Shown here piece by piece: positions 11,231 to 30,759 of a stretch of DNA of 64,000 nt. The translations under genes were made by a program, and so were the position numbers. The DNA is from Asterias rubens (taxonomy: Eukaryota). How positions within the stretch are numbered: position 1 is the first letter of the stretch; every line of letters begins with the position of its first letter. The stretch spans positions 4,340,001-4,404,000 of the forward strand of contig NC_047062.1 of NCBI RefSeq assembly GCF_902459465.1, written 5' to 3'. Under the pieces are notes generated by a model. That model did not search any database, was not told where the DNA came from, and saw only the letters and a list, made by a program, of their open reading frames with translations.

Positions 11231-14200
11231 TCAAAGCCACATTTTGAATTTGAAAAATGCTTGCATATCTGGGTCCTCCACCGTCTTTCGATTCACTCCC
11301 GCGTAGACAGTCATCAAGAGCTTGGACTTGAATTTAGCATCCAGGATTTCAACATACTTCTCCAGACATCCTAAGGGGGTTGGGGTGGGGGGAATGGGGA
11401 AAAAACATTATAATATGAAGAACAATAAATCTCATGTAGAATTCCTGAATAACAGTGTGAGCACAAAGTTAGTGTTCATTGCATGGTAATGACCCGTGTT
11501 AGGGTTGACCTGACTTGACTCGGACCAATGTTTCCCACATTAGTATAATTTCTATGTCCCTAAAACAAAATCAATTCTAGGTTATTAGGTGACAGAAAAA
11601 AAAATTCTTGACAAGAAATGAATGGTCTATATAGATGATGTGACCTATATTTTGTTAAAACCGCCCTCTGTTGATAAAAAAAACTGTATACGTCATGTTT
11701 CACCGGCCGAAAAGACGCAATGTCATGGTAAGATTGCATACACTTTCTAGCTGGTTGCCAAAATACAAAGGTTTTGCCCGGCGGTATGAGCGCGAATCAT
11801 TTTATGGTTTTTGAGTGACGTAAGAGGTCACATTAAAGAAAACCCTTTTGTTACCTTCACAAGTTACAATGTAGCTCGGACAACAATGTTTGAATACGTG
11901 TGGTGGTTCCACGCTCTTTTTACCAAGTTCATAAAAAGTCTACTATTTGTGAATTCTTACCATAGAGTTATATATAAGAACTAGAGGGCGCACGAGTGAT
12001 GCTTCGTGCACAAACGCCACGGGACCGCAAGATGACAAGCGCGTCATTCTGAACGCGCGTTGAATATGAAATACATGTTTGATTTTTTTTTTATTGAACA
12101 CTCACGCGATGCTGTTCAACTTACAAAATGGCCGCACAAACACACGCTGTGAGATGCAAGTTTTGTCAACTTAGAAAATGGCCGCCTGCGCGCATGCCGG
12201 AGCGCAGATATAGGCCAGTGCGCCCTCTAGTTCTTATATATAACTCTATGATTCTTACCGATTCCCATGACCCTCCCCCAGGAGATCATGTGCTTTATCA
12301 GCCTGGTGTCATCGAACTGTTCATGCTTCATCAGAAGTCGTACAGCCTCACCGTGTAGGTACGCATCGTCAAACGAGGACTCCTCAGGGAAAGGGAATCG
12401 GTCGTAAACATCTACTGCTTTTAAGGGTTCAGTCTTGACCACAAGATCAGCCAGCTCAATGTAAGCATCGTGGACCTTCACAAAGAATGCAAGATTTTTA
12501 TGAAAAAAAACACAAAAAACTGGCAGCACAAAGCTGAATTATGTGGTATTACAAGGTAAAATAACTGTTAAAAATTACACAGAAAAAAACATAAAATAGC
12601 AAAACCGCAGTATGGGGGTACAGAAATGGGGGTACATTCTTTAAAGATGACATTAAATAGGAGTCTAAAATTGTTTTGACAATTTACGACTGGTTACAGC
12701 ACCCTCTCATGATGAGATCAGTGAACAACAAGTGAAAAGTTGAATCTGGGGAAACTAAAAGAGGTCCTTTGATTGCTGAAATGAACTACTTGTGGTTAAT
12801 CTTGCTCATAAGTCAATTATTCAATTAAAACACTTCTGTTAAAGGCAGTGGACACTATTGGTATTTACTCAAAGTAATTATTATCATAAACTTTCTTGTT
12901 TATGAGTAATTGGAAGAGGTTGATAGTATAAAACACTGTGAGAAACAGCTCCCGCTGAAGTGACGTAGTTTTCGAGAAAGAAGTAATTTTCCACGAATTT
13001 GATTTAAAGACCTCAGATTTAGAATTTGAGGTCTCGAAATCAAGCATCTGAAAGCACACAACTTCGTGTGACCAAGGTGCGACAAGGGTGTTTTTTTTCT
13101 TTCATTAATATCTCGCAACTTCGACGACTGATTGAGCTAACACAAACTGTGAAGACTAGTCTTTGACAATTACCAATAGTGTCCAGTGTCTTTAAAGAAC
13201 CTGGATACAAATCTGTTTTCATATTGAGGACAGAGATGTGTGTTGTGAAACACATATGGACTGGCATTCAGTCCCTAGTTAACGTCTTTCCCTCCTCGGG
13301 CCTCTGTGGTACCAGAAGATGGTCCAATTTCCTTGGGATGAATATAATGTCCAGTAGTCAACTTATTTATGTGTATCAAAGTCAAGGATATGGTTCACCG
13401 TTGGTTTTATTTTGTTTTTCAGTTCTTTCATATCACTTCATGCACTTTTCTAATTTCACACTTATGAACTTAGTGCATAACTACCGACTTTCCTGTCCTC
13501 CAAAATGAGGCTTTCTCCAAGACCAAAGTGGCCTTGCCCTAAAAATGTTGTAATTCCAGGCCTGTATACTTGATATTTGACAAACCTGAGGAGCCATTAC
13601 AATGACATCATTATACAGCATCTGAGCTTCGGTAGTATCGTCTGCATCTTTAGCAAGGGCTCTTGCGAGTCCAAGTCGTGCTGGGTGTGTGATGCGATTC
13701 AGCGGACCATTGCTTGAAACAGGAGCTGCCTGCTTGGCTGGTTGTATTACGAGTAGATTATGAAATAATACAAAGGGGTTAGGTTTATGTTTAAAACCAA
13801 TCCAAAGTCAAAGTACCAGATTGGAAATTTTTAAAGATTAGTGCCCATCTGAAAGGCAGTGGACACTATTAGTAATTACTCAAAATAATTATTAGCATAA
13901 AATCTTACTTTGTAACTAGTAATGGGGAGAGGTTGATGGTATAAAACATTGTGAGGAACGGCTCAAAGTAGTGTAGTTTTCGAGAAAGAAGTAATTTTAC
14001 ACGAATTTGGTTTGAGACCTCAGATTTAGAATTTGATGGCCTCGAAATCAAGCATCTGAAAGCACACAACTTCATGTGACAAGGGTGTTTTTTCTTTCAT
14101 TATTATCTCCCAACTTCTGATCGATTGAGCTCAAATTTTCACAGGTTTTTTTATTTTATGCCTATATTGAGATACACCAAGTGAGAAGACTGGTCTTTGA

Positions 14201-17200
14201 CAATTACCATAGTGTCCATTGTCTTTAATGTTGATAAATTTCTCACTTCTCCTTCAGTGTCCAAATTAATGGCTTTGAGATTGGCTATGGCTGGATCACT
14301 GAAAATGCATATTCTTCAGCAGCCAGCAGCCATAGCCTAAGCGGAAGACATTATTATGATCATATATTTCTGGTAACCCTGTAGAGAAATACATTGTAGT
14401 ATCTTCTGTGTCGCCTCGAATAATCTTTTATTAGAAATTGCACTTTACAAGTTTATATTGTTAATTATTATAATTATATAAGAAATGGTGTCACTGTGGT
14501 CAAGTGGTTAGACTGCAGGACTTGCAATCACAAAGTTGTGGGTTTGAATCCCTCAAGCTAACCGCTGATTTCACAATGACTAGAATCGTTATTGTCTTCT
14601 AGTTACTGAATCACAATTTCTTGATTTGTGCAACTCATAATTGTGTAACAAATTAATTTGTATGGGAGAGATTGCCTGTTGCGTTTAAAACCCCTTTTGG
14701 GAGTTTGCCGAATTCCCTTGATTGGGAAGACCATCTAAACAAGTTCATTGCACGTACTATTCACACCATTACCTGTATCAGCAGGCTTGACTTCTGGTGT
14801 CTTGGCAGTGACTGTTCCATTTGCTTTTGCAGGGGTTGCTACTTTGGTTGCACTGTTTGATGGGGATACTTTAGGGGCTGCCTTAGCTGGTGTCTTGGCA
14901 GCTGCACCTCCACGGGCTGCTGCACCCCCTCTTGCTAGAGTGGAAGATCCCTTGGGTGCAGCGGCCCCTCGTGCTGGATGCATGAAGTTAAGAAGAGATG
15001 AGTTTAAAAATGAAGACAGAAATGAAGTCAAACTGTAGCCATACCCGGTTGGCTTTATAGCTGTGCAACTTTATGGTTACTCAATTGACAATCACAATTG
15101 GTTGATTTGTGCAATTCATAATCACAGACGTTAAACCAATTTTTGAATTCATACAAACATTGGTTTGAGAGAGAATGGCTGTTGCCAGCTTGCGTTATTG
15201 TATCACCCTTGTGGTAGCTTTTCCAGAGTTTCTCTTTTTTACCAACCCCCAAAAACAAATAACGAACAATCCCTACCTGCTCCCCTGGAAGCACCCCTTG
15301 CTGCAGCACCCCTTGTAGTTGCCCCTCCTCTTGTAGGTGCACCCCTTGCTGCAGGTGCACCCCTTGCTGCAGGTGCACCCCTTGCTGCAGGTGCACCCCT
15401 TGCTGCAGGTGGCCCTCTCCCTCTTGCTGCAGGCGCTCTACCCGCTGGTACCTTAGTCGCTCCTGTTGCAGGTGTTTTGGCTTTCTCAGCTGCTGCTTTC
15501 TTGGCTTCCTCTTCTTTCAGTTTGTTCTGCCACCAAGCTTGATCTGCAATCAATGTCAAAAAGGTATTGTTTTAACAAAAATATCCAATGATAAATTTAA
15601 AATGGATAATTTTTTTATACAATTTTCCTGAATAAGCTTGCACACCTTGCACTTTTTTAAATACTCTTCACCATGTTTATATCACACATTCATAAATACC
15701 TCAGACAGTTTCGCTGTTCCGATTGGTATAGAGCATGTCGCGTGGGGGTGTTTAAATGGTCGATAATGACCAGCTGGAGCTCTGTTTATAACCTGTTGTT
15801 TTCGTATACTACGCACTAGTCTTGGTGCAAGACATTTCTTGTTACGGGCAATGCAGGCGCTGTCGGTGAGTTGGCCACGCTGTGTGTGAAAGGAAAACAA
15901 GAATGTCTTACACCAACGCGCATGAACGGATCCGCAAACTGTCTTCTCAGCCATAACAATGCAACACACGGACGTACAGAGCTCAATCACGTCGGAAACG
16001 AATCAGTTTTACAGAGTTTCTTACTTTATTACGCCTTTTACCCAAAAAGGCATTTATGAATGGGAATAAAAGAGTAGCGACTCATTCTTTAACGGCCGTG
16101 TAAAACCTTGCAGGGTCATTGCCGTGCGATAAAGGCCTTTTTCACACGGCAACGACCCTGCTGGTTTTAAACGGCCATTTAAGAAATCGTCGCTACCCTT
16201 TTATTGCCTTATTTAAACATGCCCACGTGATCTCCTCTCAACTAATCAGGATAGATAACCTTTCCATATACATATGTTTTTACAGGAATTCAGTCAATCT
16301 CACCCTTGAGTTGCTCCGGGATGTCTCTGCCAGTGATGGCTTTCCCTTCCTGTGCTATACTAGCTCGGTATGACAGTCTAGCATCAACCAGCGCCTTCTT
16401 GCCAGACTCTGCAGCTGGATCGTTATCATACATAGCAAGCTGAGAGTTTCCAAGTTGGCACAGTGTCTGGCTGGATGTAGGCTGGGCTATCACACCCTTC
16501 TGGCACGTCTGTAACCAAAAAAAGGAAACCACACACTTGTTGTAGTTGGTATGGCACTGCTCTAGAATTGCAAATGTCGTAGGTTCGAATCCCATCCGAG
16601 TAATATGCCTGTGATTTTTTTTCTTCACAGAACTCGGTAAAGTACTGAGTATACAGAGCCAACACACATTGGTATTTATGGGTAAAAACAAAAGGAATAT
16701 TCTTTATCCCGATGCAAATTAAAAGTCACCTGGAAGTGGTATTTTTTCAAAATAAAGCTTTTGACACTAATATATGTGTTTTGATGAGTGGAATGTGAAT
16801 AAACAGTTAACTAAGGTTTTAAAAAATTAGTTATTATGTTATGTACAAATTTAAGAGTAGACCCCGACATGAGAGGGCGCTGTTTGTGACGTCAATCGAG
16901 GCAGACTTTGCCTGTAATGCGTAGAGTAAACACAATTGCAAAGTACATCTACGGACCAAGTCGTGAGTTTGTACGTTTAAAAAAAAAAAAAAAAAGGGTT
17001 TTTTTCCGGCAATGGCGACCAGGTGTATTGCTGCTGAATGCAGAAAAACACTTTTTGAAATGTACCAACTCACGACTTGGACGAACATGTACTTTGCACG
17101 TGTGTTTACTATACGCATTGCAGGCAAAGTCTGCCTCGATTGACGTCACAAAAGGGGTTGGCGGAGTCAGCCCCCAAACAACTTTATATATTTTTTAAAC

Positions 17201-20200
17201 ATATAAATCGTAACAAACAATTACTAAAAAAATTGTTTTATTGTCCGTAAGCATATACTCTTATGTTTGAAAGAAAACAAAATTCTATTTCCAGGTGACT
17301 TTAACATCTATTAAAAAGTGTTCTTCTTTCTTATTTCACATTCACTACTTTCTGGAGAACGAGAACAAAACAGAAAAGAGAACACAAAGGTCTCCATGGG
17401 ATAATTCTAAAGACTGGAGTGCTCCACAAGGAATTGTGTGTACAACGTCTTTGGGAGGCGGACCAAGGAAAGAACAAAAGATGTCTCAACGGGATGCAAA
17501 TAACACTCATTTTTGAAAATGAATCAAATAATTAACAATGTGGGTGGGTAGCCTAGTGCACCAAGCTCAAGCTATAATCAGCAGGGGTTCAAGTCCCGAT
17601 CTTGGCAAGACACCTGACCATTATTGCTTCGCCCTTCAGATGGGGATGCAAAGCCACTAGTTCCATGTGTTGTGTTATGCATGTGAAAGTACCAAGATAC
17701 ACTTATACAGTTCAGAGAAGTGGTTCACCCCGGTGCTTTCTGGTATGGTCTACTGAAAATCGCGCCACAGGACCTTGCTGCTGTATGGGTCTTATAATTC
17801 GAACATATAGCCTCTACAAACTTTGTAAAAAAATAATGAGCGCTTCGAGATGCCCTTCCGTATGACAAAGCGCTAAAGCGAAAACTGCCTATTATTATTA
17901 AATAATACCTTCTCCTGCAACTGGAGTATTTCAATGCTTTGGGGTAGGGATGAACATCTTATAAGAGCAGTGACTTGCTGACATCGTTGAGCAATCCAAG
18001 ACGTATTCCCTGGATTGGTCTCTTGCAGCATCTCAAGGAGATTGGAGTGACAATCCAGGAGGATCCACTCCAAGGATTGATAAGTGTCACCTCGAGACAC
18101 CAGAGAACACAGGTTTTGGGACGCAAGTAACGCTGTACTGTAGTGGTAACAAAATGAAATGCAAAAGAAATGAAGAGCAAAGCAAAAATAGCACTGAATA
18201 TACTCAGTACTTTCTTGTGAAATAAATATCACAGGCATATTGAACACATCACCCTTGCAATTCTAGAGCATTGTCTTACAAACTTTTTAATTTGTTTATT
18301 TTTTTCACAGGACTCAGGAAAGTCATGAGTATACAATGCTAACACACATCGGTGTATGGGTAAAAACCAAAATTAATATTCTCTGTCCCCGATGCAACTT
18401 TAACATCTTCTATAAAATAATAATGCTGTTTACATGCAGTCTAGCTTTCCACAGAATGTTTGTATGAGAACAGAACTGGGCGCAATGTCACAAAGCCTGT
18501 AAGCATAAACAATTCCCCAACTGAATGGCTCACCCATGTTGATCAAGAGCTACATGAATGAATGGTGTTTGAGTCACTTGAACAAGAATCGCATTGTCCT
18601 TAAGATGGTACAATTTTGCAGCAAGATGGGCAGTTGATACAAAAACATGGTCGCAAAAAAACTAAAGCAACAACAAATATTATTTGTCTTTTTCCCTTAC
18701 ACTGATGTGCGTTGACGGAAAAAAAATCTTCTCTGTTAGTAAAAACAAATAAAGTTGTCCCCCAAGAAGGGTAAAACTTTGCTTCACACTGTTTCTGGAA
18801 ATAAGCATAACCATGCACATACCTGTGGAATACATTCTGTGCTGCCATTTTGTTTGGCAGTTGTGATATCTTAAGGAGTCCTCCCAGTGTGACACACCCA
18901 CGATAGAGTTGGATGTTGCTGGATCGCCAAAGATCCTCAGAATGCAGAGGAAGGTCAACGACACTGTGTAAATATAAAAACAGATTGCATTTAGTCTTGG
19001 GGCAAAGCATTGTTATGCACTTATTTCCATCACTGGGCATTGAAATCGCAGTGTTGCATTCCATATGTAACTCGGGTGTGCGGCTGTGTTCACTACCATT
19101 CAATTAAGTATTTTTATTTACTTGAGCCAGTGTACAACACCTCACTATAATAATAATAAGAATAAGTAAAATAAAACCAGCTCTTATATAGCGCAATTCC
19201 AAAGAATCGATCGATGCGCTTTACACACAAACAATAGCAAATATACTACACTAGAATAAATAAGTTTTGAGGTTGCGTTTGAAAGCTGAAACTGTTTGAG
19301 AGGACCTTATGGTATTTGGTAATGTGTTCCAGAGAGTTGGCCCGAAAACACTGAATGATCCATCGCCTATCCGCCTGCTACTCTTAGGGATGGAAAGACG
19401 AGTAACGTCCCGGCTCGATCGCAGGCCTTCCCTAGATGGTACATGGGTGGCAATGCAGTCTTTCAGGTAGACAGGCGACAGATCATTCAGAGCTTTGTAG
19501 ATGTAGAGTAGTGTTTTGAACTTGATCCTTTTGTCAATTACTAACCCTGAGGGCTGGTAACACCGAGTCATGGCAGATCTGATTTATTTCACTGTTTAAG
19601 TTCAAATGTCCTGGGAGAGTCAAAGTCCTTCGTAATATTGACTAGACTGTTTCACATCTAAGAGGGGGTCAGGTCCCAGAGCTTAGAAGTATTTTTTTTT
19701 GAGAGACTGAAATTTATTTCACTCATACACTTTGTGCACAAAATTGTACAGACATAGAGTGTAGAGCAAGTTTTTAGATTTGGAAGCAAATCTTGTAAAT
19801 ATAGCATCAATATCATAGAAGTATGTTGGGTTTTGTTGTAGCACATACTCTGATTGTTCCAACTTTGACATGTATCAGCACCAGTGTGAAAAAAAGAGTT
19901 TAAAAGAAATAAACTGATAAACAATACAATGGTGTAGATATAAATTCTGTAGAGTTAAGCCCAGTTCATACTTGCAAATATGATGCGTTACAAATTTTGA
20001 CGCCACAAATTCACAACGATTTGTTCACAACAGTTGAAATGTGCTCAACTCCTGTGAAACACTCGCTGCAGAAACAGCCATGTCATGTCAAAATTTATAT
20101 CGCATTCGCATTTGCAAGAAGTATAAACCAAGCTTTAAGAGCCCACACCAACCTATCGGAATCGGACTCCGCCTTTAGTGTAACACACTGCAGGAGATAC

Positions 20201-23200
20201 ATCCAGCCATCATGGAGATATGTGATGGCTTCTTTAGCTCGATTTCCAACTCCTCCTTTCTGCTGAGCAAGAGCAAGGCCGAGGTAAAACCTAAGTGAAC
20301 AAAACAAAGATGAAGAATTTATACTTCACAAAACAATAATGCAAAAGCCACCATCATGCGGCCCACCCTCGCTCATGTCACATTAGGCATTTTACAGGCA
20401 ACCCGTCCGAAGCAACATTAAAATGTTCACATTAAGTTCCTTTGTGCATGAAGTGGAGTTGGTTGCCTCCAAGTAACCTGGAAATAATGCCCTGTGTGAT
20501 AAGGCCCTAATAGAATTCTCGTATTGACTGTACTTGGGCCAAATTTAAATTTCATAGAGCTGAAAAATATTGCTTAAACATTTTCTGGGTCTAGTCATAA
20601 CCAAGCATTAAAACCTCTTCATTTTCTACAAGGCGCCAGGTCTGAGGTCTCCACCTGCCTTGTGCTACATTAAATTGATCCTTCATTAGTTCACTCCTGT
20701 ATTAGAATCATTCACTCTAAAGTACATCAGAATGTACAGATTAAAATGCAAAACTTTAAACAATTATTTCCATGGTGCTATGGCAAGCTTCTTATTTTTG
20801 TTTAACCCCAACATATTTAAATCATTTTCCCAGTCAGTTTCCCTTGTCGTTTATTACTGGATACTCTAATTAAAATCAAAACATTGACTGGTAAAATACA
20901 AAAATTACTGCGTTATCAAATGTAGTCAAGGTGCTCTTAACACAAAAATTGAATAAAGACACAAACAGAGGGGGAACACAATTATTTAAAGCCATTGGAC
21001 ACTTTCAGTACAGAAACAAAAAAAAGTTCACAGATTTACAATAGGGTTTACAGAAAGTAATGGTGAAAGACTTCTCTTGAAATATTATTCCATGAAATGC
21101 TTTACTTTTTGAGAAAACATTAAAACATATCAATTCTCGATATCAAGAACTACGGATTTATTTTAAACACATGTCATGACACGGCGAAACGTGCGGAAAC
21201 AAAGGTGGGTTTTCCCGTTATTTTCTCCCGACTCAAATGACTGATTGAGCCGAAATTTTCACAGGTTTGTTATTTTATATAGAAGTTGTAATACACGAAG
21301 TCTGGGCCTTGGACAATACTGTTTACCGAAAGTGTCCAATGGCTTTAAACATCTATTAAGCTTTTATTGAGCCCCAGCAACCCACCTTGCAATAGTTAGA
21401 TTGGGTTTCAATCCCACGGCTAGCTGAAGTCTGATCAAGGCCTCATCAGGTTTGCCTTGTAGGAGAAGTAGGCGACCCACATGGACATTGTAGATGGCAT
21501 TATTCTGATCAAGGGACAGGGCATCTAGGTATTTGAGGTAAGCTTGCCCGAGGGGCGTCTCTTGATCGGAGGCTGCCTGAGCTGCCCGCCCATCCTGCAT
21601 AGAGAAACAAAAGAAAGCATTAAATATTATTTCATTTGATTATTACTACTTTTATTTTTTGCAGCCTCCTCGGAATAAAAAACAAAAAGTCAAAGCAGGG
21701 TTTAAAAGAAGTTAATTTATAAGGAATAAAAACTTTTGTATTGTACAGGATTGGTAGAGCTGACATAAATAGTCGCAGTGTTCATGTTTTGTGTTATCAA
21801 CCCTATACATGAAATAACAAACCTGTGAACATTTTGGCTTAAACTGTCGTGTGAGTCAGGCAAAAAGAGTAACGACTCATGCCCAACATTCAGCATGTAA
21901 TTACATTGTCCTTTAGATTTGGTAATGACAACCGAAATCAGCTGTTGCCCTATTTTAGGTTTTCAAATATAGTTTTCGTGAAAATGTCTTCATTTCAAAC
22001 AATTGTGATGGCACTAAGGCTGCAAATAGACTGGTGCCTTTTAAACAACTCATAATGTAGGCCTACTGCTGATCACCTAATGGAGATGCAAGGAACCCAT
22101 TAACGATGATGCCCAGCTTTACCTGGAGAGCTTGTTTAGACTTCCATATATACAACCCCTGGACGTAGTCTGCTTTCCCCGACTGCCCAGAATCCAAGAG
22201 GAACTTGTACTCTTCATCGATGGCTTGTAGTTGTCGAGCCAGTGGAGCATTGGATCCTGCCCCTCGCTGTACGCAGATAGCCTGGATGTCATCCTCTTTG
22301 CTGCTTGCTTTGGCATCCAAGCTAAGGGAAGCCATTCCCAGGCCAACATCATCTTCCTACAAACAGTAGTTAAACTTGATTCTGTTAATATGGGTTTGAA
22401 CATGGTGTTATCCGCAAACCAATCTTAGTTATACTTCCACCATTGGGGAGGTAGTTCTTTCTGCTCTACCTGCTCTGATGGATGATACCCAAGCCTGCAT
22501 CCATATATGAAACCCTGTTTCAGCCTCAGGAGTAGGTGGCAACAGCCCCTAGAAAAAATAAATTGTAGCCCACACCTTAAGGCCTCTGGCGACTTGCATA
22601 AACAAAAAACATGCAAAGTTTTAAATCCTACCTAATATGGGTTTTAAGACTTTGCATGTAGGGGTATCAAATGTATGTTTAGTTTGCGGTAGCATCAAGT
22701 GTACTTTGAGCTGTAGATTGGTCTTGAGAACATGGGTCTTGCTGCGAAGTTAGATTTAAGATTTTGGGAGATTAATTAGTTTTTAATAATAATAGTAATA
22801 CAAATAAAACCATAATAAAAGATCTGTTTTGCTCACTAAGTCCTACCTGATGGGGGAGGTAAAACATCGACCGGGACTACTACTTTTGCTTAGTGGATTA
22901 AGGAAACTTCTAGTTGTTAAATGCACTGCCGTGCAGTGAGTTATTAAAACACTCCTCAAAAAATAAGTTTTCCAATGTTTATGATATCTAGTATTGAAAA
23001 ACCCACTTAGTAAGGAAAACAATACCTTTTGTTTCCATCTACTCATTTCTCAAAAAAATATGAAACTTGCAAAATCTTACAGCAAATGTATTACAAGTTT
23101 ACAGCAAAAGGTATGAGAAGACCTTGGCATTAATCCTTCACACTTTCCATATTGCAACCTGAAAACTTTCTCAGTTAAAATGTCCTACTTTTGAATCGCT

Positions 23201-26200
23201 TGCATTTAATTTTTTAAGGGGTTCACATGCTGCTGCACAAACCTCAGTTTTGTAGCCAAACATATCTTGTGCATAATAATGCTCCTCCAAAACGAGTCCT
23301 AACTGGAAATGATGACTGGCTTGCTTAGGGCTCTGCTTCATGGCTAGAGCTAGATTGACGGCAGCTACTTGCAAATAATCCAAGGGAGATTTCCCTCCCT
23401 GGATCCTGCCTGCCTGTCCTGATAACAAGAAACAAACAAAGTTCCAGTTGATTATCTGTTTGGCATGTGTCGTAGCTGAGAAGTCTAGTTCACCGATCCA
23501 AGCTCTGGTGTTGTCAGCAGCAGAGTATGGGTTTGAATCCTGGTCGTGACACTTTTTCCCTTGAACAAGGCACTTGTTCATAATTGCTTCGTACAAATTT
23601 GGGGAAGGTAGTGCATACTGCTTTACCAGCCAGGCTCCTAGTGGATGATACCCAAGCCTACATCCTTCTGGACTGTGAAGGGGGGGGGTAACCCTGTTTC
23701 AGCCCAAGGAGTAGGTGGCCACAAGCCTCTGGTGGCAGTTGATTTGGGTCTTTCTCTCCTAACAGTGGTCCGCAAGCCAAATAAAAGTTAAAACACCTGA
23801 GCACCAGTCAAAGTTCTCTTCAAGTGGTCCGGCTGTCTTGTTTAATGTTGAAAAGCATCCTTATTGAATATGGACTAGTGAAAATCAATCGGGCCTGGTG
23901 AAATGTCAAGAAATTTGGTCATGCTGGTTAGTAACTGAAAAGGCTAAGAGCAAACCCTGCCAACGGTTAAAAGCACCTAGCATTCATCAAGTAAATGTTT
24001 TTAATACTGAGCAGAATGATGCTGAGAGCTTGCTCTTTGCTCTTGTAATACATCAGTGAGATGATTAAAGCATCTTTATACTGACCTTGTTTTGGCAGGC
24101 TCTTCCTGTATAGTCCAATCTGCTTCTTAGCCTCATCCTGGCTGCCAGATCCTCCAGTCTGATGAAGACTCTTCTCCCAAGAATGATCCTGAGACACACA
24201 AACATAAATACATGAATTGATCCTCAGGAATTCTTTAAAGACACTTGACACTTTGGATCAATTAGTCATTGTAGTTTCCAATTAAAAGATCAGGGTTGAG
24301 GTATTTCTTTATTTGAGTGAGAAATTAGCCTTTCTCACAATGTTTTATACTATCAACAGCTCTCCATTGCTCATTACCAAGTAAGTTTGTATGCTAATGA
24401 TTATGTTGAGTACCAATAGTGTCCAGTGAAAACCAAAACTATTAAGACAACAGTAACTTTTAGACACAGATTTTATACAAGAGTTTTACACAGCATGGCC
24501 GAGTGGTCAAACGCACTGTGTTTCTAATCAGTGGGGTGTGGGTTCAAGTCCCTGTTTTGGCACTTGTGTCCTTAGGCAAGACACTTAACCACTATTGGAT
24601 TAGAAAAAAACCTTTAGGGATGATTACCTTAATTGAGTGTTTGATGTCTCTATCTGAGTGCTTACTGGTACACAAGTTGGCTTTATGCCAGTCACTTTCA
24701 CCCTTCAAAACCTTCCTGCTGCAATCTCCACATGTGTCTGCTTCTCCCTAAAAAAAAAATTAAAATTGTTTAATTACTAGAATAATAAACTCTCCTATAG
24801 ACCCCTTGCATTAGCCGCCTTCTTGGTGAAACAAGCATGTGTAAAAGGCTATCATTGACTGAGAGTTGTGCGCAGCGCACACACTTTTACATTGTTTTAC
24901 ATCAAAGAAGGTGGTCAATGTGCAAACCATTTACTGGTAAGTCATTTCGTCTGATGAAGCCATACGTTTTCATTACTTCCGGATCCAAATCTGGCATATA
25001 TTTGTGTGTAATTTTTGAACAAAATATCAGCCATTTTATTGCTTAAAAGAATCTCTTACGACAGAAACTTACAGATCTGAGAAGAACCTGAGTATTTGAA
25101 GAAATATCTACAAGCCAAGTCCACCGATTAAACTTGTCTCACTTCAATCCTCCTACAATTAAAAACTAGCTCAATGCAATTCCGATTGGCCTGTGGTAAT
25201 TGTTAGATCCAGATTGTGTGTGAATTGGACAGAGAGGGACTCAAAAACATTCAAACCTGAGAAACAATTCTGCATGCAACATTGAATTGGGTAGTCCAAT
25301 TACAGATTATTCCTGGTGGACATAACCGCTCCAGATCTTTGGCAATATCTAAAAAATGCTACCAACTTTTGAAAGTAATTTGCACAGGTTAGTTCAAAAA
25401 TCAAAAATGCAGTACTTTCCCATTAAGGTGAGTGAAATGGGTGAAGCATGACCAGTACACTTTTGTCAAGCATTGTGGTATATACTTACAGGGACTTCTG
25501 TATCAGTCTTTGGTTTGAGGGTGCAACTTTTCACATGGCTGCCAAGTTCAGACAATTTGACTTTTGACTCGCATCCTGTAAAATAAATTAACAAAAAGTT
25601 TTGATGACAGTTTTGAACCTACATGTATGTTTTGCATTGCTGCTGTAATAAAATAAATAAATAAAATAGTTTGTTGTAAAAAGTCTCTCTGTCATTTGAA
25701 TTTTGTAAAAAAATTCATTCACACAATTAATCTTTAATTTTGGAAGGAAAAAGACAAAATGACTAGAGTTGAACCTTTGACCTCAGGATTAGCATGCCGT
25801 TACTCTACCAACTGAGCTATCTAGCCCTATATTGGCGGTGTCCCTATTTTGTCAGTATCCTTGTTCAGGTGTACCAGTCAGAAGCCATACAACCTGTAAC
25901 TTCCGAATAGCTAGGGATCAACACCCAAGTTTACGACACAATCTGGACAGTGGCCAACTCACGGGAATGCAAGTTCTTTCATACTAGCTCAGTTGGTGGA
26001 GCACCAAAAATGTAACCAGAGGTTGTAGGCTAAAATACTGCTCTCTAGTCAATTTTTCTTTGTTCAAACCAAAATTAAAAAGAATTTACCCAGTCAGTTC
26101 CCCTTATGGTTTATAATTGTAAATATTTATCTATAGCAAATTGTTAAATAAATCTGATTTACCTAGAAAGCTGTACGGGCATTTTACAATGGCCCCGGAG

Positions 26201-28694
26201 ATCTCCTTGTCTAGCGCCCTCTCTGTGACCTTCCACTCAGGGTCAAGGGGAGTGGCATCTAACGGATCCTGCTTTGATGTCTTAGTGAGTTCATCTATGA
26301 TGGGTTCGCTGAAGACATGCTTAGGATCTGAGCCCGATATGCTTACGGGACGGTAGAGGGGGGCTAAGGTGATGGGACATTCAAACTTCAGTGCTTGGTT
26401 CGGATCAATGAAGGTGACTGCTTGACTGAACCACTTTCTGATTACGCTGACTGAGTAGACCTGGAATACAATTACACAATAATTAAAACTATTTAAAACC
26501 CTATTGTCGTAATTGCACATAATTTTTACATTGTAAACTGAAAATACCGTTTTGTATTGTCCATTTTATTGATCAGTATTTATGACTTTGACATTGTTCT
26601 GTTTTACTTTTGTGAATCTCATCTTTTGAAATGGTTGTTTAGCTTTTTAACTTTTTGCCAGCTTTATGTATCTAGATTCCTTAAATTATTTTACTGTATA
26701 ATACTTTGCTTTGTATAAATTTTGTCTGGTCCAGACTTTTATTGTTGTTCTTTTCCAGCACCTTGAGGCGGATTCTTTCTGCTATTGTTTTTGCGCTTTA
26801 TAAATTTCTCTTTATTATTATTTTTTGTGTTCTATATTATTCAACATTAGGTTGACTTGACTAGTCATGCCGAACCATAAACTAACCTGTGCAAGTTGGC
26901 AATAATTATTCTAAATGTTTTGATGTAATTCTGAAGAAAAAAATGTTGGGAAAAAGAAAAGAAAAGCACAGCCAATGCTTCTATATAAGCCTTTTTGAGG
27001 TATGGTGGCCACTATAGGAGTGAAATGTTTGGGTGTATAGCCTATCCAAACTAAGTTGTGTTATAGTAAGGTGACTCTGGCCTGTGTCGGGAAGAGCTGC
27101 GTACAGCAATGGAGGACCATCATCATGGCCATCATTAGGCGCTTTACAAATGTCTTATTAATATTATTATTATTATCATCCGATGCTCCGCACCGACTGA
27201 ATGAATGAAGGTGTCCACCATTACAGAGATGAAATCACATTAGAAAAATTCAAATTTGTTATATATGCTGACCTGCTTATTTGACCCATCAACTGAAGTG
27301 ACCTCAATGCTGACCTCTGTCTGCCCAATATTGAGACTGACCTCTGACCCTGGATCTGACCCACACACTTTGACCCCTGTCTTCTTATCAGGAACAATAG
27401 GGGTCACAGTAATAGTTGTTGTGGAGCTTGGAACTGCACCTTTAGATTAAAAAAAGAAGAAGAGGTTTTTTTGAGTGATGTGCATCAACAGATACTTTTG
27501 GGCAAAATGTCATTGATTAAAAAATAAAAAAAAATTTATTGAAATTGTGAAATCTACAAATTCCACAGATTTTCCTTTCTTTTTCAGGGATTTCATGGCC
27601 GAGCGGTTTAGAGCATCCTATTTCTGGTGCTTTAGTCATCAGGTTGTGGGGGTTTGAATTCCAGCCATGATACTTGTGTCCTTGAGCAAGAAACTTTACT
27701 ACAATTGCTTCTCTTCACCCAGGGGTATAAATGGGGTACTTGTGAGGGTAGAAGATGATATTGTATTTTGAAAAAGCCTTCTGAGAGCGCCACAGCAGTC
27801 AAGAAAGAATACAGGCATACAGGTTGCTGAGAAAGAATACAGGAATGTTATTGGCCCAATGACCAGGGCACTACTGTAAAGCACATTGATATGTTATTGT
27901 AAAATTCGCTATATATTTTAACTAGTTATTTTAATAATAATATTCTAGACCAAGTAACCGGGGCACTATTCAGCGCCCCAGTTACTGGATCTATTATTAT
28001 TCCAACTTACAGATATACTCCAAAACATCGCAGCTAAACTCCGGCTGTAAGGCACCACTGGATACTTTGATTCCTGTCAAAGAAGCGTCACTAGCTGAAA
28101 GTCTCTTTGCGTTAATCTGGTACAGTTTGGTTGTACCATCTTCAGCTGACACCTCAATCTTTATGGCAGTGACATCCCCCTCTTTAAGTGGAAGAGTCCT
28201 CTCTCCACCACTTCCCTGTTTAAAATTAGTATTTCAGACAAATCTTTGAAATTTTATTATAATAAACCTGTTGTTTAATACAAAGTCGGATAATACCTAC
28301 TCCTAGAACTATGAGGTTCCTTTTGCTACCGGATGTTGTACTATTAGATAAGACGAAGAATGTGCCAGGTGATATAAGGGTAGCTTCGAAGGAGATGGAG
28401 AGAAGTACCAGGACCTGGCCAGGGAACTTCGTAAGAGTTGGCAGGTAAAGGTAAAAGTAGTCCCCGTGGTGGTTGGAGCACTTGGCACCATTCCCAAAGC
28501 ACTGGGGAAACATCTAGATGAAATAGGGACAAAGGTGAGGGTAGATCTGTTACAGAAGGCAGTGCTTTTGGGAACAGCGAGGATCCTGAGAAAGACCCTT
28601 CAGATCTAAGCCTACGGGACGTAGCCCGACTCGAGGAGCTACCGGCACAAAGGAAAATGAGATCTTTCTTTTGCATGCTGTGATAAAATAAAAT

Positions 28695-28751
<57 letters not shown>

Positions 28752-30759
28752 CATTTCTATGGCGCTCTACAATTAACACAGCGCCTCACATGAAAAACAA
28801 AATAACATAAGTAGAAAACAAAACAAAAGAAAATTACAAGAGGCTCTCAGTGGGGAAACAAAAACGTTTTGAGAGACCGCTTGAAGATCGAAGTAGACTC
28901 TGCTTCTCTGACGTCACAAGTCAGTTGGTTCCAAAGCTTAGGAGCTGCATTGAAAAATAGATTGTCTCCAGCCGTTTTATAGGAGCGAGGAACAACCAAG
29001 CGTGTGACATCAGAAGCAGAGCGGAGCCTTTTACGGTCTTCAGAATGACCAGTATTGTAGAGGATGAAGTTTACTGTGAGGTATTTTGGTGCTTGACCAT
29101 GAAGACCATTTGTAAACATACAGGAGGATTTTGTATTTGATTCTTTCTCATACTGGCAGCCAGTGAAGAGATCTCAGCAGGTCAGAGGAATGTTGTTCTC
29201 TGCCACAGGCAAACACAAGACGAGCAGCTTTGTTCTGAAGGCGCTGTAGACGCTTGAAATCAACTTCTCTGACACCGTACAATAGTGTGTTGGCGTAGTC
29301 AATGCGAGAAAGAACCAAAGATCTGACAGCATGATGGCATGACGACTGAGTTAGAAACCTGCGAATACGCCATAAATTGCGGATATGAAAGTTAACACTC
29401 TTACATACAGAATTTATGTGACTGGTCATGGAGAGGGATGAGTCGAGATTTACACCCAAATTTTTAACAGTAGCAGAGGGGTTGGATATGTCATCTAAAT
29501 CGAGCTGGATGTTGGGAAGTGTGTTAAGAACCCTCGGAGAGGCAAACACCATAAATTCAGTTTTGGCTTGATTTAGTTTCAACCTATTACTACTCATCCA
29601 GGTGTTGATTTGGGAGATGCAAGTAGAAAGATTTCTAAGGGCACGTTGGCAATCACCTAGAACCTTGGAGTCAAACTCAGTATAAAGTTGGGGGTGTCAT
29701 CGGCATATACATGAAAATTAATATTGTGGTTTCTTATGATGTCGCCAATGGGATGAGTGTACATGATAAATCCCTGTGGTCCTATTACAGAGCCCTGTGG
29801 TATGGAGCATTTAAGAACATGGTTATCAGATACTGCATTTCTAATGGACAATTTGGTACAGCGATCATGTAGGTAAAACTGGAACCATGCAAGGGCAACA
29901 CCTGTGATACCAAAACGGGTCTCAAGCCTATCCAAAAGAATATGATGATCAATTGTATCGAAGGCTGCGGACATATCGAGTAAAACCATGAGAACAACTT
30001 TGTTTTTGTCAAGAGAATGTGAAATGTCACTTTTAACCTTGAGCAAGGCCGTTTCTGTACTGTGGTGTGCTTTATAAGCGGATTGAAATTTCTCATCAAA
30101 GTTGCTGTTGTTGACGTGGTTTATGACTTCACATGAGGCAGCCTTTTCAGTAAGTTTGGCAAGGAATTTAACATTAGAAATCGGGCGAAAGCTATTGAGT
30201 ACTACATTGCAATCCATGGTTTCTTGAGCACAGGTGTGATGATGGACTGCTTTAATGTTTCAGGGCAAACACCGGACGTGAGCGAGGCATTGACAATTCT
30301 GGTTATAACAGGTAGCAGGATGGGTAGACACTCTTTGATTAGCCATAACGGAATAGTGTCAAGTGAGCAGGTTTTGTTGGTGATGGACTTAAAAGTAGGC
30401 ATAATTAAAACATAAACAAACAAACAAACAAACTTAGTTACAGTCAACATTTAAAAAAAGTATACTACAAATAGTACAAACACAAACAATGTGTTGGTTT
30501 TCTTTTAAGGGAACATGCAAAGAGTAGAGGAGAACTACAAACGTTCAAGTTACTGCTACATCTATGTCCAAGCTTGGAGGAAAGAACACAGTTTTACCAA
30601 AATTTGACAAGACGCATTGCTGTCACTTGTTAAACAGTCGACAGTCAACTTCTCCACATTGCAGGGAAGGGTCACTCCATATTCTGTTGTGTTGACATGA
30701 AATTTAGGGCTCAGCACACCCGGTTTTATCGACAACTTTTCCAAATCAGCATTGTCCAT
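11231..30759 (-). CDS. Uncharacterised ~1149-aa protein: tandem cadherin-like beta-sandwiches, U-box/RING-like module, TRAF-type Zn fingers, TPR-like repeats, RGA-rich disordered region, compact C-terminal domain
   Basis: 19 phase-consistent exons: 30598-30759, 28011-28215, 27273-27439, 26163-26460, 25490-25575, 24628-24747, 24086-24188, 23243-23418, 22123-22356, 21386-21594, 20153-20290, 18823-18963, 17909-18137, 16304-16508, 15277-15543, 14773-14973, 13586-13737, 12259-12475, 11231-11370 (3450 nt, TGA at 11231-11233). Motifs: LSPKFHVNTTEYGV...IEVSAEDGTTKLY and LQPEFSCDVLEY...IEVTSVDGSNKQVY (cadherin-like); FECPITLAPLYRPV...HVFSEPII...DPL (U-box-like); CPYSFLGC...H...C and CGDC...H...C (TRAF Zn). 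Domain names are inferred by eye. Confidence 0.88.
11961..12250. mobile_element. hAT-like MITE with 33-bp perfect TIRs and 8-bp TSD
   Basis: TIR CATAGAGTTATATATAAGAACTAGAGGGCGCAC and its reverse complement; ATTCTTAC at both 11953-11960 and 12251-12258. Confidence 0.9.
12839..13195 (+). mobile_element. Kolobok-like MITE family A (~360-400 bp, TTAA-flanked), near full-length copy
   Basis: TTAA-AGGCAGTGGACAC ... GTGTCCAGTGTCT-TTAA. Related copies at about 6568-6775, 9238-9524 (-), 13852-14228, 24240-24430 (-), 32268-32617 (-), 41061-41335, 46394-46721, 49600-49720, 50930-51301 (-) and 53794-54169. Confidence 0.85.
15295..15440 (-). repeat. Coding 18-bp tandem repeat encoding (AARGAP)n
   Basis: GCACCCCTTGCTGCAGGT repeated about 4-5 times within exon 15277-15543. 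Confidence 0.95.
16719..17304. mobile_element. Kolobok-like MITE with long internal inverted repeat, nested in a tRNA-derived repeat
   Basis: TTAA-AAGTCACCTGGAA ... TTCCAGGTGACT-TTAA; internal inverted repeats at about 16883-16975 and 17053-17150. Confidence 0.85.
19147..19548 (-). mobile_element. L2 LINE 3' fragment
   Basis: ORF IKFKTLLYIYKALNDLSPVYL...GLRSS...GDGSFSVFGPTLWNTLP...FKRNLKTYLF, followed by GCGCTATATAAG and a (TAT)n tail. Confidence 0.9.
19958..20134. mobile_element. PIF/Harbinger-like MITE
   Basis: TTA|AGCCCAGTTCATACTT ... AAGTATAAACCAAGCT|TTA (imperfect TIR). Confidence 0.65.
20986..21348 (+). mobile_element. Kolobok-like MITE family C
   Basis: TTAA-AGCCATTGGACAC ... GTGTCCAATGGCT-TTAA; second copy at 39659-40042. 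Confidence 0.85.
25752..26062. mobile_element. Element with two outward-facing degenerate tRNA-like heads
   Basis: Minus head TAGCTCAGTTGGTAGAG...GGTTCAACTCTAGTC and plus head TAGCTCAGTTGGTGGAG...CTCTAGTCAATTTTT. Partial relatives at about 44940-45120 and 63830-63925. Confidence 0.65.
27590..27900 (+). mobile_element. tRNA-headed SINE with conserved central box (GTCCTTGAGCAAG...CACCCAGGGGTATAAATGGG)
   Basis: Head CATGGCCGAGCGGTTTAGAG...GGTTTGAATTCC. Related SINE fragments at about 14495-14590, 17540-17750, 22440-22590, 23480-23730, 24495-24600 and 51700-51930 (-). Confidence 0.7.
28270..28696 (+). mobile_element. 3' fragment of a non-LTR retrotransposon with a restriction-like endonuclease (R4/Dong-like)
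   Basis: Degenerate PDVVLLDKTK...VPGDIR, then the open frame 28400-28609 EKYQDLARELRKSWQVKVKVVPVVVGALGTIPK...LQKAVLLGTARILRKTLQI-stop. This is typical of the PD-(D/E)xK REL domain. A short 3' UTR ends at (TAA)n. Confidence 0.75.
28697..28750. repeat. (AAT)n microsatellite, about 18 units
   Basis: Directly visible; lies between the R4-like and L2 elements. Confidence 0.98.
28751..30412 (-). mobile_element. 5'-truncated L2/CR1-clade LINE (reverse transcriptase, frameshifted) in intron 1 of the TPR gene
   Basis: ORF pieces: FRPISNVKFLAKLTEK, QSAYKAHHSTETALLKV, LLDMSAAFDTIDH, IPQGSVIGP, YADDT, LKLNQAKTE, LGVNLDSSLSM, LHWLPV, APKLWNQL...FKRSLKTFLF. The 3' end runs into an (ATT)n tail. Confidence 0.95.

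What the first reader, a model, noticed from the sequence alone, without database searches (positions are those of the whole stretch)
11231..30759. Uncharacterised cytosolic E3-ligase-like protein with bacterial-type cadherin-like domains
The assembled 1149-aa protein has no signal peptide, yet starts with tandem cadherin-like beta-sandwich repeats of the kind usually seen in bacterial surface proteins (PF12733-like). These are followed by a U-box/degenerate RING (CPIT..PL..PV...HVF....I....DPL...PL), two TRAF-type zinc fingers, TPR-like helices and a compact C-terminus (YAGVNRKTVEDPDMQAFFKFKMWL). RING/U-box plus TRAF-Zn is the architecture of TRAF-type ubiquitin ligases; TPRs suggest chaperone or adaptor binding. 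I know of no functional study of this combination. Domain calls are by eye.
Basis: partly seen in the sequence, partly recalled or inferred. Interest (0 to 1): 0.72.

Follow-up and report, generated by a model that had tools for sequence, protein, structure and literature searches.

The report
Uncharacterised animal U-box ligase-like gene
This is a real, expressed 19-exon gene for a 1149-residue soluble protein that joins two bacterial-type beta-sandwich domains to a zinc-less, TRAF6-like ubiquitin-ligase module and long TPR arms; it belongs to an unstudied family found from sponges to amphibians but not found in amniotes.

Summary
The protein aligns end to end with orthologues from sponge, coral, molluscs, echinoderms, amphioxus, tunicates, fishes and amphibians. 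Spliced RNA contigs confirm several junctions.

The protein has:
- no signal peptide or membrane segment;
- two PF12733 Cad-L domains, about 30-34% identical to bacterial tandem arrays;
- a RING-derived, zinc-less U-box-like domain in exon 4;
- two CCHC fingers;
- a TPR superhelix of about 500 aa and a C-terminal TPR domain.

For exon 4, all 50 best of 48,161 PDB representatives are RING or U-box domains. Its closest solved relative by profile is TRAF6 RING+ZnF1 (E 7e-6).

- a conserved RG-rich disordered linker;
- mosaic loss of zinc sites. RING site 1 survives only in sponges, coral and a hemichordate, so RING became U-box-like several times within one orthologue family.

Every relative is annotated "uncharacterized". 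A 2010 paper noted only the Cad-L domain of the sea-urchin orthologue.

The most likely function is a TRAF6-like U-box E3 ligase, inferred and not shown. It is not a TRAF family member.

The parts
30598..30759 (-). Exon 1 (aa 1-54): start codon and first half of Cad-L domain 1
   Evidence: tblastn of six orthologues begins at residue 1 here; weak PF12733 hit on the exon alone; donor TTG|gtaaaa
28011..28215 (-). Exon 2 (aa 55-123): rest of Cad-L domain 1, start of Cad-L domain 2
27273..27439 (-). Exon 3 (aa 123-178): Cad-L domain 2
26163..26460 (-). Exon 4 (aa 179-278): end of Cad-L 2; zinc-less RING-derived U-box-like domain (about 26409-26191); first Cys of ZnF1 (codon at 26181-26179). The second ZnF1 Cys (aa 279) is in exon 5.
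   Evidence: AF2 model with RING/U-box-only fold matches; TRAF6 alignment; 62 homologues found with this exon
25490..25575 (-). Exon 5 (aa 278-306): remainder of ZnF1, overall C-x6-C-x11-H-x3-C
   Evidence: PF18574 zf_C2HC_14, 25.1 bits against a cut-off of 25; splice sites
24628..24747 (-). Exon 6 (aa 307-346): ZnF2, C-x2-C-x11-H-x4-C (24732-24670)
   Evidence: Cys/His pattern conserved in echinoderms, coral and Saccoglossus; no Pfam or PDB sequence hit
24086..24188 (-). Exon 7 (aa 347-381): start of the helical/TPR region
23243..23418 (-). Exon 8 (aa 381-439): TPR superhelix
22123..22356 (-). Exon 9 (aa 440-517): TPR superhelix
21386..21594 (-). Exon 10 (aa 518-587): TPR superhelix
   Evidence: TPR_17 E 9.5e-4 on the exon; consensus-TPR PDB hits on profile positions 520-606
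20153..20290 (-). Exon 11 (aa 587-633): TPR superhelix
   Evidence: donor chosen from orthologue spacing, without RNA support
18823..18963 (-). Exon 12 (aa 633-680): TPR superhelix
17909..18137 (-). Exon 13 (aa 680-756): TPR superhelix
   Evidence: RNA contigs join it to exon 14
16304..16508 (-). Exon 14 (aa 757-825): end of the TPR superhelix
15277..15543 (-). Exon 15 (aa 825-914): conserved Q-x-W-W-Q-x-K motif, then a repeated RG/AP-rich disordered linker
   Evidence: 18-nt tandem repeat; acceptor supported by an RNA contig; RG repeats conserved in orthologues
14773..14973 (-). Exon 16 (aa 914-981): RG/AK/P-rich disordered linker
   Evidence: RNA contig joins it to exons 17 and 18
13586..13737 (-). 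Exon 17 (aa 981-1031): start of the C-terminal TPR domain
   Evidence: OGT-TPR profile hits
12259..12475 (-). Exon 18 (aa 1032-1104): C-terminal TPR domain
11231..11370 (-). Exon 19 (aa 1104-1149 plus TGA stop): conserved C-terminal helices

Best explanation
What the locus encodes (shown). It is an expressed, intact 1149-aa soluble intracellular protein. It is the echinoderm orthologue of an old, apparently animal-only, unstudied family.

Anatomy from N to C terminus (shown):
- two Cad-L beta-sandwiches of bacterial type;
- a RING-derived domain that has lost its zinc ligands and looks like a U-box;
- two TRAF-spaced CCHC zinc fingers;
- a TPR superhelix of about 500 aa;
- an RG-rich disordered linker of about 130 aa;
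- a C-terminal TPR domain of about 165 aa.

Proposed mechanism (inferred). The U-box-like domain binds an E2~ubiquitin conjugate through the conserved E-C-P-[IV]-x-L and D-P-L-D loops. These correspond to the TRAF6 residues that contact Ubc13. The linker helix and ZnF1 would assist as in TRAF6, so the protein would act as an E3 ubiquitin ligase. The Cad-L pair and the TPR arms would select substrates or partners. The RG-rich linker would give RNA, condensate or arginine-methylation-dependent contacts.
For: Gene and expression.

Cad-L domains: and PMC2824669.

RING/U-box fold of exon 4:
- the AF2 model has pLDDT 65;
- the Foldseek top hits are U-box/RING domains and spliceosome chains;
- all 50 best of 48,161 PDB representatives are RING or U-box, with Z up to 5.5;
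- in the full-length orthologue model the region has pLDDT of about 77-94.

TRAF6 RING+ZnF1 is the best solved sequence relative: E 1.2e-3 with the exon profile and 6.9e-6 with the family profile. RNF125 RING+C2HC follows at 1.6e-3.

Conservation of the equivalents of TRAF6 Ubc13 contacts in 36 orthologues (contact list from PMC5346735):
- E69: 33/36;
- P71: 33/36;
- I72: I, V or M in 35/36;
- L74: 33/36;
- P106: 35/36.
The TRAF6 linker-helix Arg that contacts ubiquitin (PMC5702613) corresponds to K or R in 28/36.

Residues 201-250 are the most conserved 50-aa block of the whole protein, with mean identity 0.62.

TPR regions.

The RG linker is conserved from sponge to vertebrates.
Against: - No activity data exist for any family member.
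- The Pfam U-box, RING and zf-TRAF models are not reached at their curated thresholds.
- The fold-match scores are modest (Foldseek E about 0.3, Z at most 5.9), and the stand-alone model is only of medium confidence.
- All eight RING zinc positions except C1 and H4 are replaced in the window protein.
- ZnF1 and ZnF2 have lost their ligands in several phyla. A TRAF6-like role for ZnF1 therefore cannot be universal in the family.
- M75, A101, Q54 and D57 of TRAF6 are not conserved.
- No basic residue occupies the U-box 'linchpin' position. This comparison is from my own knowledge of CHIP and E4B.
Confidence: 0.58

Rival explanations
1. Non-catalytic scaffold or pseudo-ligase. The RING-derived domain survives only as a structural, dimerisation or E2-sequestering module. 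The protein would then act as a TPR/Cad-L adaptor without transferring ubiquitin itself, possibly pairing with an active RING partner as Bmi1 or BARD1 do.
For: Zinc ligands are lost in a mosaic way in the RING, ZnF1 and ZnF2. The best structural matches by Z are Bmi1/PCGF, the non-catalytic partners of RING heterodimers. Curated RING and U-box HMMs are not reached.
Against: The residues that are best conserved are the ones that contact the E2 in TRAF6. This block is the most conserved of the whole protein. True U-boxes are zinc-less and active, so zinc loss does not imply inactivity.
Confidence: 0.3
2. Secreted or surface carbohydrate-binding or adhesion protein, like the bacterial proteins that carry Cad-L arrays. 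The intracellular reading would then be an artefact of a missed 5' exon.
For: Cad-L domains are typical of bacterial surface proteins and were proposed to bind carbohydrate (PMC2824669). CPED1, the other animal carrier, has a signal peptide according to that paper.
Against: An in-frame stop lies 18 nt upstream of the ATG. The six orthologues laid on the window start at the same Met, and every orthologue in the family alignments starts with that Met and the same first residues. No hydrophobic segment exists anywhere in the protein. RING/U-box, TRAF-type fingers and RG-rich linkers are intracellular modules.
Confidence: 0.03
3. Decaying or mis-assembled gene: the ORF is a chance chain of exon-like pieces or a pseudogene.
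For: The introns carry many transposon insertions (RT fragment, MITE, SINE-like copies). RNA depth over exon 15 is very low.
Against: The frame is intact across 19 exons and all introns are GT-AG. The protein aligns end to end with orthologues at 37-59% identity. Spliced RNA contigs exist.
Confidence: 0.02

Closest known systems
TRAF6 N-terminal RING-ZnF1-ZnF2 module (PDB 3HCS, 3HCT, 5VNZ, 7L3L)
   Same: The order of the parts is the same: RING-like domain, linker helix, then a CCHC finger. TRAF6 is the best solved sequence relative (E 6.9e-6). Equivalents of the Ubc13-contact residues E69, P71, I72, L74 and P106 are conserved. ZnF2 spacing, C-x2-C-x11-H-x4-C, equals that of TRAF6 ZnF2; the TRAF6 spacing is from my own knowledge.
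   Different: The RING has no zinc site left in the window protein. There is no coiled coil and no MATH/TRAF-C domain. Cad-L domains lie upstream and a TPR superhelix downstream. D57, Q54, M75 and A101 are not conserved.
U-box E3 ligases (CHIP/STUB1, UFD2/E4B, PRP19, plant PUBs)
   Same: Both have a zinc-less RING-like fold. The C-P-I-[ST] and D-P-x-x-x-x-P-L motifs are present. Structural matches include OsCIE1, GmPUB13, Ufd2, CHIP and Prp19 U-boxes. Like CHIP, the protein combines a U-box with TPRs.
   Different: The Pfam U-box model does not hit. Within this family the domain visibly descends from a one-zinc RING that sponges, coral and a hemichordate still keep. The domain order is the opposite of CHIP (U-box before the TPRs). 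An EEVD-binding clamp was not tested.
RNF125/RNF114-type RING + C2HC finger ligases (PDB 5DKA, 8GBQ)
   Same: A C2HC finger directly follows the RING. Exon 5 reaches the PF18574 threshold. The profile match to RNF125 has E 1.6e-3.
   Different: The match is much weaker than to TRAF6. There is no UIM or C2H2 finger, and the flanking domains differ.
CPED1 (C7orf58) and bacterial Cad-L (PF12733) surface proteins
   Same: They share the Cad-L beta-sandwich family. The sea-urchin orthologue LOC580673 was cited when the domain was defined (PMC2824669). Identity to bacterial tandem arrays is 30-34%.
   Different: Those proteins are secreted or surface-bound and pair the domain with esterase, glycosidase or cell-wall modules. 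Here the pair sits at the N-terminus of a protein without signal peptide, in front of a ubiquitin-ligase-like module.

Membership tests
Cad-L / Cadherin-like beta sandwich (PF12733) | Match to the Pfam model above the gathering score | tested here: met
   Orthologues that align end to end score 91-110 bits (cut-off 24.2) with two stretches each. The window's single exons score only 14.6 and 19.2 bits, because each domain is split by introns. Window aa 3-186 match bacterial arrays at E 1e-25.
U-box | Match to the Pfam U-box model (PF04564) | tested here: not met
   There is no U-box hit at E up to 1 on exon 4 or on the orthologue segments. Only zf-Nse and RING models hit, below threshold.
U-box | RING-like fold without zinc ligands | tested here: met
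   All 50 best PDB representatives are RING or U-box domains. Only C1 and H4 of the RING ligand positions remain in the window protein.
U-box | E2-dependent ubiquitin ligase activity | not testable with these tools
   This needs biochemistry. Only conservation of the E2-contact equivalents is shown.
RING finger (C3HC4/C3H2C3) | Eight cross-braced zinc ligands | tested here: not met
   Site 2 is D or N at C7 in all 36 orthologues. Site 1 is complete only in sponges, coral and Saccoglossus. The window has C, T, S, I at the site-1 positions.
TRAF family | C-terminal MATH/TRAF-C domain and coiled coil | tested here: not met
   No MATH hit appears in any Pfam scan. The model shows TPR helices and a disordered linker instead.
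TRAF family | RING followed by TRAF-type CCHC fingers | tested here: inconclusive
   The profile alignment to TRAF6 RING+ZnF1 has E 6.9e-6. Pfam zf-TRAF scores only E 0.17 on an orthologue. ZnF2 is supported by spacing only.
TPR proteins | Tandem 34-residue helix-turn-helix repeats that form a superhelix | tested here: met
   Pfam TPR_11 and TPR_17 exceed their cut-offs in several orthologues. A consensus-TPR structure matches at E 1e-11. The helical solenoid spans 348-850 and 986-1136 in the model. Structural matches are to Ctr9, Ski3, SPINDLY and OGT.
CHIP-like chaperone-dependent E3 | TPR carboxylate clamp that binds Hsp70/Hsp90 EEVD tails | not tested
RPAP3 and Tom71 appear only as generic TPR matches with TM below 0.3.

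The most novel reading that the evidence does not exclude
The protein is a cytosolic 'lectin-type' ubiquitin ligase. The Cad-L pair, of bacterial origin, would bind glycans that should not be in the cytosol, such as lumenal glycans on ruptured endomembranes or bacterial cell-wall polymers. The TRAF6-like U-box-ZnF module would then build ubiquitin chains on or near them. This would be an ancient animal surveillance system that amniotes and ecdysozoans replaced.
Probability: 0.1. Interest if true: 0.8.

Novelty: new variant of a known kind. Interest (0 to 1): 0.55.

Why it matters
An animal-wide, highly conserved ligase-like protein has escaped study, probably because it was not found in mammals, flies or worms in my searches. 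It does occur in tractable species: Xenopus, cyprinid and other teleost fishes, Ciona, sea urchins, amphioxus and corals.

Its architecture puts a domain otherwise known from bacterial surface proteins in front of a ubiquitin-ligase module, which is unusual.

The family also gives a natural series from a one-zinc RING to a zinc-less U-box-like domain. The zinc site was lost independently at least three times, in molluscs, echinoderms and chordates. The old proposal that U-boxes are RINGs that lost their zinc therefore becomes testable within a single set of orthologues.

Tried and rejected
- Pfam on single exons gave only sub-threshold hits, because the domains are split by introns. I used orthologues instead.
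- The ESM Atlas search on exon 4 pointed to RING clusters only (score 0.92, 169-173 shared features). Its recognition value, 2215, was under the tool's 2300 mark, so I treat it as a lead only.
- The ZnF2 exon has no PDB or Pfam sequence match. A weak zf_UBZ hit (E 0.027) on the coral orthologue was not pursued.
- Literature searches for the architecture, for PF12733 and for six LOC identifiers gave one relevant paper, which covers only the Cad-L domain.
- Fold searches with the full-length orthologue model found no characterised protein with this architecture. They returned only generic TPR proteins, family members and bacterial Cad-L proteins.
- The Cad-L domain tree puts all animal d1 domains in one group (100/96) and all d2 domains in one group (90/92). 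Its backbone is unresolved. It therefore cannot say whether the pair came as a tandem from bacteria or arose by duplication, and no donor can be named.
- My recalled idea that TRAF6 D57 is conserved was wrong: the equivalent residue in the window is V.
- A word search of the scan's earlier findings returned nothing.
- The assembled 1149-aa protein has no reference id, so it was not sent to Pfam, structure prediction or the database searches. Exon references and orthologue ids were used instead.
Full report
**1. The observation**

ORF listing and composition show a multi-exon eukaryotic gene on the minus strand. I searched 1.8 billion representative proteins with the exon-4 translation. This returned 62 relatives, among them full-length proteins of 858-1241 aa. 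All are named "uncharacterized protein", from a crinoid, sea urchin, acorn worm, amphioxus, scallop and fishes.

tblastn of six of them against the window lays their residues in order from 30759 down to 11234. Splice-site and frame analysis gives 19 exons:
- all introns are GT-AG;
- the CDS is 3450 nt and encodes 1149 aa;
- the stop codon is at 11233-11231.

The assembled protein aligns over 1-1149 with the Lytechinus (59%) and Antedon (56%) orthologues. It aligns at 37-47% with mollusc, coral, sponge, frog and fish orthologues.

Contigs of public RNA runs skip the introns at 17909|16508, 14773|13737 and 13586|12475. One contig ends at the exon-15 acceptor, 15543. Exons 15 and 16 have little sequence homology to the orthologues, and this shows they are transcribed. 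The E11/E12 junction rests on orthologue spacing only.

**2. Anatomy**

*No export signal.* The maximum 19-residue hydropathy is 1.08, and the N-terminus is hydrophilic. An in-frame stop lies 18 nt before the ATG, and the six orthologues laid on the window start at the same Met.

*Cad-L domains, aa 1-188.* Orthologues score E 1e-26 to 1e-32 on PF12733, with two stretches each. Window residues 3-186 align with tandem arrays in bacterial and metagenomic proteins at 30-34% identity, with E down to 1e-25. Outside the family, the only database hits are such bacterial proteins, and they cover only the N-terminal 19%.

*RING-derived domain, aa 196-268, exon 4.*
- The AlphaFold model of the window exon has pLDDT 65.
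- The Foldseek top hits are U-box or RING domains and U-box-bearing spliceosome chains: Prp19, OsCIE1, TRAF6, LNX2, RAG1.
- An aligner that scans 48,161 PDB cluster representatives without Foldseek returns RING or U-box domains in all 50 top rows. The Z values are modest, at most 5.5.
- The family profile finds TRAF6 RING+ZnF1 as its best solved relative. E is 1.2e-3 with the exon profile and 6.9e-6 with the full-length profile. The alignment runs through the linker helix into the first finger.
- In the full-length model of the Lytechinus orthologue (pLDDT 78, pTM 0.71), this region has pLDDT of about 77-94.

*Zinc fingers.* ZnF1 has the pattern C-x6-C-x11-H-x3-C and spans exons 4 and 5. Exon 5 alone reaches the PF18574 C2HC threshold. 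ZnF2 has the pattern C-x2-C-x11-H-x4-C and lies in exon 6. It is supported by its pattern only.

*Helical regions.* A helical solenoid spans about aa 348-850, and a second TPR block spans about aa 985-1149. Evidence comes from Pfam TPR hits, matches to consensus-TPR and OGT structures, and structural matches to Ctr9, Ski3 and SPINDLY/OGT.

*RG-rich linker, aa about 825-981, exons 15-16.* This stretch is disordered. It is 32% Ala and has 13 RG dipeptides in the window. It starts with a conserved Q-x-W-W-Q-x-K motif. The RG repeats recur in almost every orthologue, from sponge to vertebrates.

**3. Zinc sites across 36 orthologues**

- RING site 2 is gone everywhere: the C7 position is D or N.
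- RING site 1 (C-x2-C ... C-x2-C) is complete only in two sponges, a coral and the hemichordate Saccoglossus. Molluscs, echinoderms (including the window), amphioxus, tunicates and vertebrates have S, T or other residues at those positions.
- Hemichordates are the sister group of echinoderms (established phylogeny). The site was therefore lost at least three times.
- ZnF1 is intact in coral, echinoderms, amphioxus and vertebrates. It is lost in sponges, molluscs, tunicates and Saccoglossus.
- ZnF2 is intact only in coral, echinoderms and Saccoglossus.

In contrast, the equivalents of the TRAF6 residues that contact Ubc13 are almost invariant. The contact residues are E69, P71, I72, L74 and P106 (PMC5346735). 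They are conserved in 33-36 of 36 orthologues. The linker-helix Arg that contacts ubiquitin in TRAF6 (PMC5702613) corresponds to K or R in 28 of 36. Residues 201-250 are the most conserved block of the whole protein.

**4. Distribution and prior knowledge**

Members come from these groups:
- Porifera, Cnidaria, Nemertea and Mollusca;
- Echinodermata, Hemichordata, Cephalochordata and Tunicata;
- cartilaginous and ray-finned fishes, coelacanth and amphibians.

No amniote, arthropod or nematode appears among the 212, 93 and 15 hits. This suggests loss but does not prove it, because the tool filters candidates by shared words and by length. No non-animal protein shares the U-box+TPR part.

All names are "uncharacterized", apart from a few evident mis-annotations.

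The paper that defined the Cad-L domain cites the sea-urchin orthologue LOC580673 as one of a few animal examples. It proposes bacterial origin and carbohydrate binding for the domain, and it does not mention RING, U-box or TPR (PMC2824669).

Fold searches in AlphaFold DB found only family members, bacterial Cad-L proteins and generic TPR proteins.

A domain tree groups all animal d1 domains together (100/96) and all d2 domains together (90/92). Both domains therefore predate the animal radiation. The backbone is unresolved, so no donor can be named.

**5. Interpretation**

The anatomy, its conservation and its expression are shown.

The mechanism is inferred. The zinc-less RING/U-box would recruit an E2~ubiquitin through the conserved loops, assisted by the linker helix and ZnF1 as in TRAF6. 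Cad-L and TPR would bind substrates or partners, and the RG linker would add RNA or condensate contacts. I put this at about 0.58.

The main rival is a non-catalytic scaffold or partner subunit, at 0.3. It draws on the zinc-site decay and on the Bmi1-like best structural matches.

A secreted adhesin and a pseudogene are both unlikely.

The protein is not a TRAF family member, because it has no MATH domain. It does not reach the curated U-box or RING HMM thresholds. It works like, and descends from, a RING-ZnF module.

**6. Verdict**

It is a new variant of a known kind (RING/U-box E3-like), in a family that is sequenced in many species but unstudied. Interest is moderate.

Noticed in passing
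window 11953-12258 (minus strand, intron 18): A MITE with long terminal inverted repeats sits immediately after the exon-18 donor. Its 8-bp target-site duplication, GTAAGAAT, is the 5' splice site itself: exon|GTAAGAAT-[MITE]-GTAAGAAT. Splicing still uses the upstream copy according to RNA contigs. The scan already noted this as s1-151118.
   Followed up: partly
window 28850-30450 (minus strand, intron 1): A frame-shifted, 5'-truncated non-LTR retrotransposon lies in the same orientation as the gene. It has a reverse-transcriptase domain (RVT_1, E 1e-20, at 29660-30259). A related C-terminal ORF fragment lies at 19254-19583 in intron 11.
   Followed up: partly
window 12841-13079 and 13852-14087 (introns 17 and 16): Two copies of a short interspersed element lie about 1 kb apart, 80-92% alike. 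RNA-run contigs cover them at summed depths near one million, so the element is very abundant and transcribed in this and related species. An inverted partial copy lies at 24331-24412.
   Followed up: no
window 23529-23590, 24540-24601, 27650-27711; also about 25780-25850: Several copies of a tRNA-derived SINE-like tail lie in the introns. ARAGORN finds no intact tRNA gene between 11000 and 31000.
   Followed up: partly
window 16304-16508, 15277-15543, 14773-14973, 13586-13737 (exons 14-17): Exons 14, 15 and 16 all end in phase 1, and exons 15, 16 and 17 all start in phase 1. Skipping either RG-rich exon would therefore keep the frame. RNA depth over exon 15 is very low, perhaps because its 18-nt tandem repeat is hard to assemble. 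Alternative splicing of the linker is possible.
   Followed up: no
orthologues P0079 (coral), P0088 and P0259 (sponges), P0007 (Saccoglossus) against the window, aa 206-232: Within one orthologue family the RING keeps one complete zinc site in early-branching animals and a hemichordate. It has lost that site independently in molluscs, echinoderms and chordates. This gives a natural RING-to-U-box series.
   Followed up: yes
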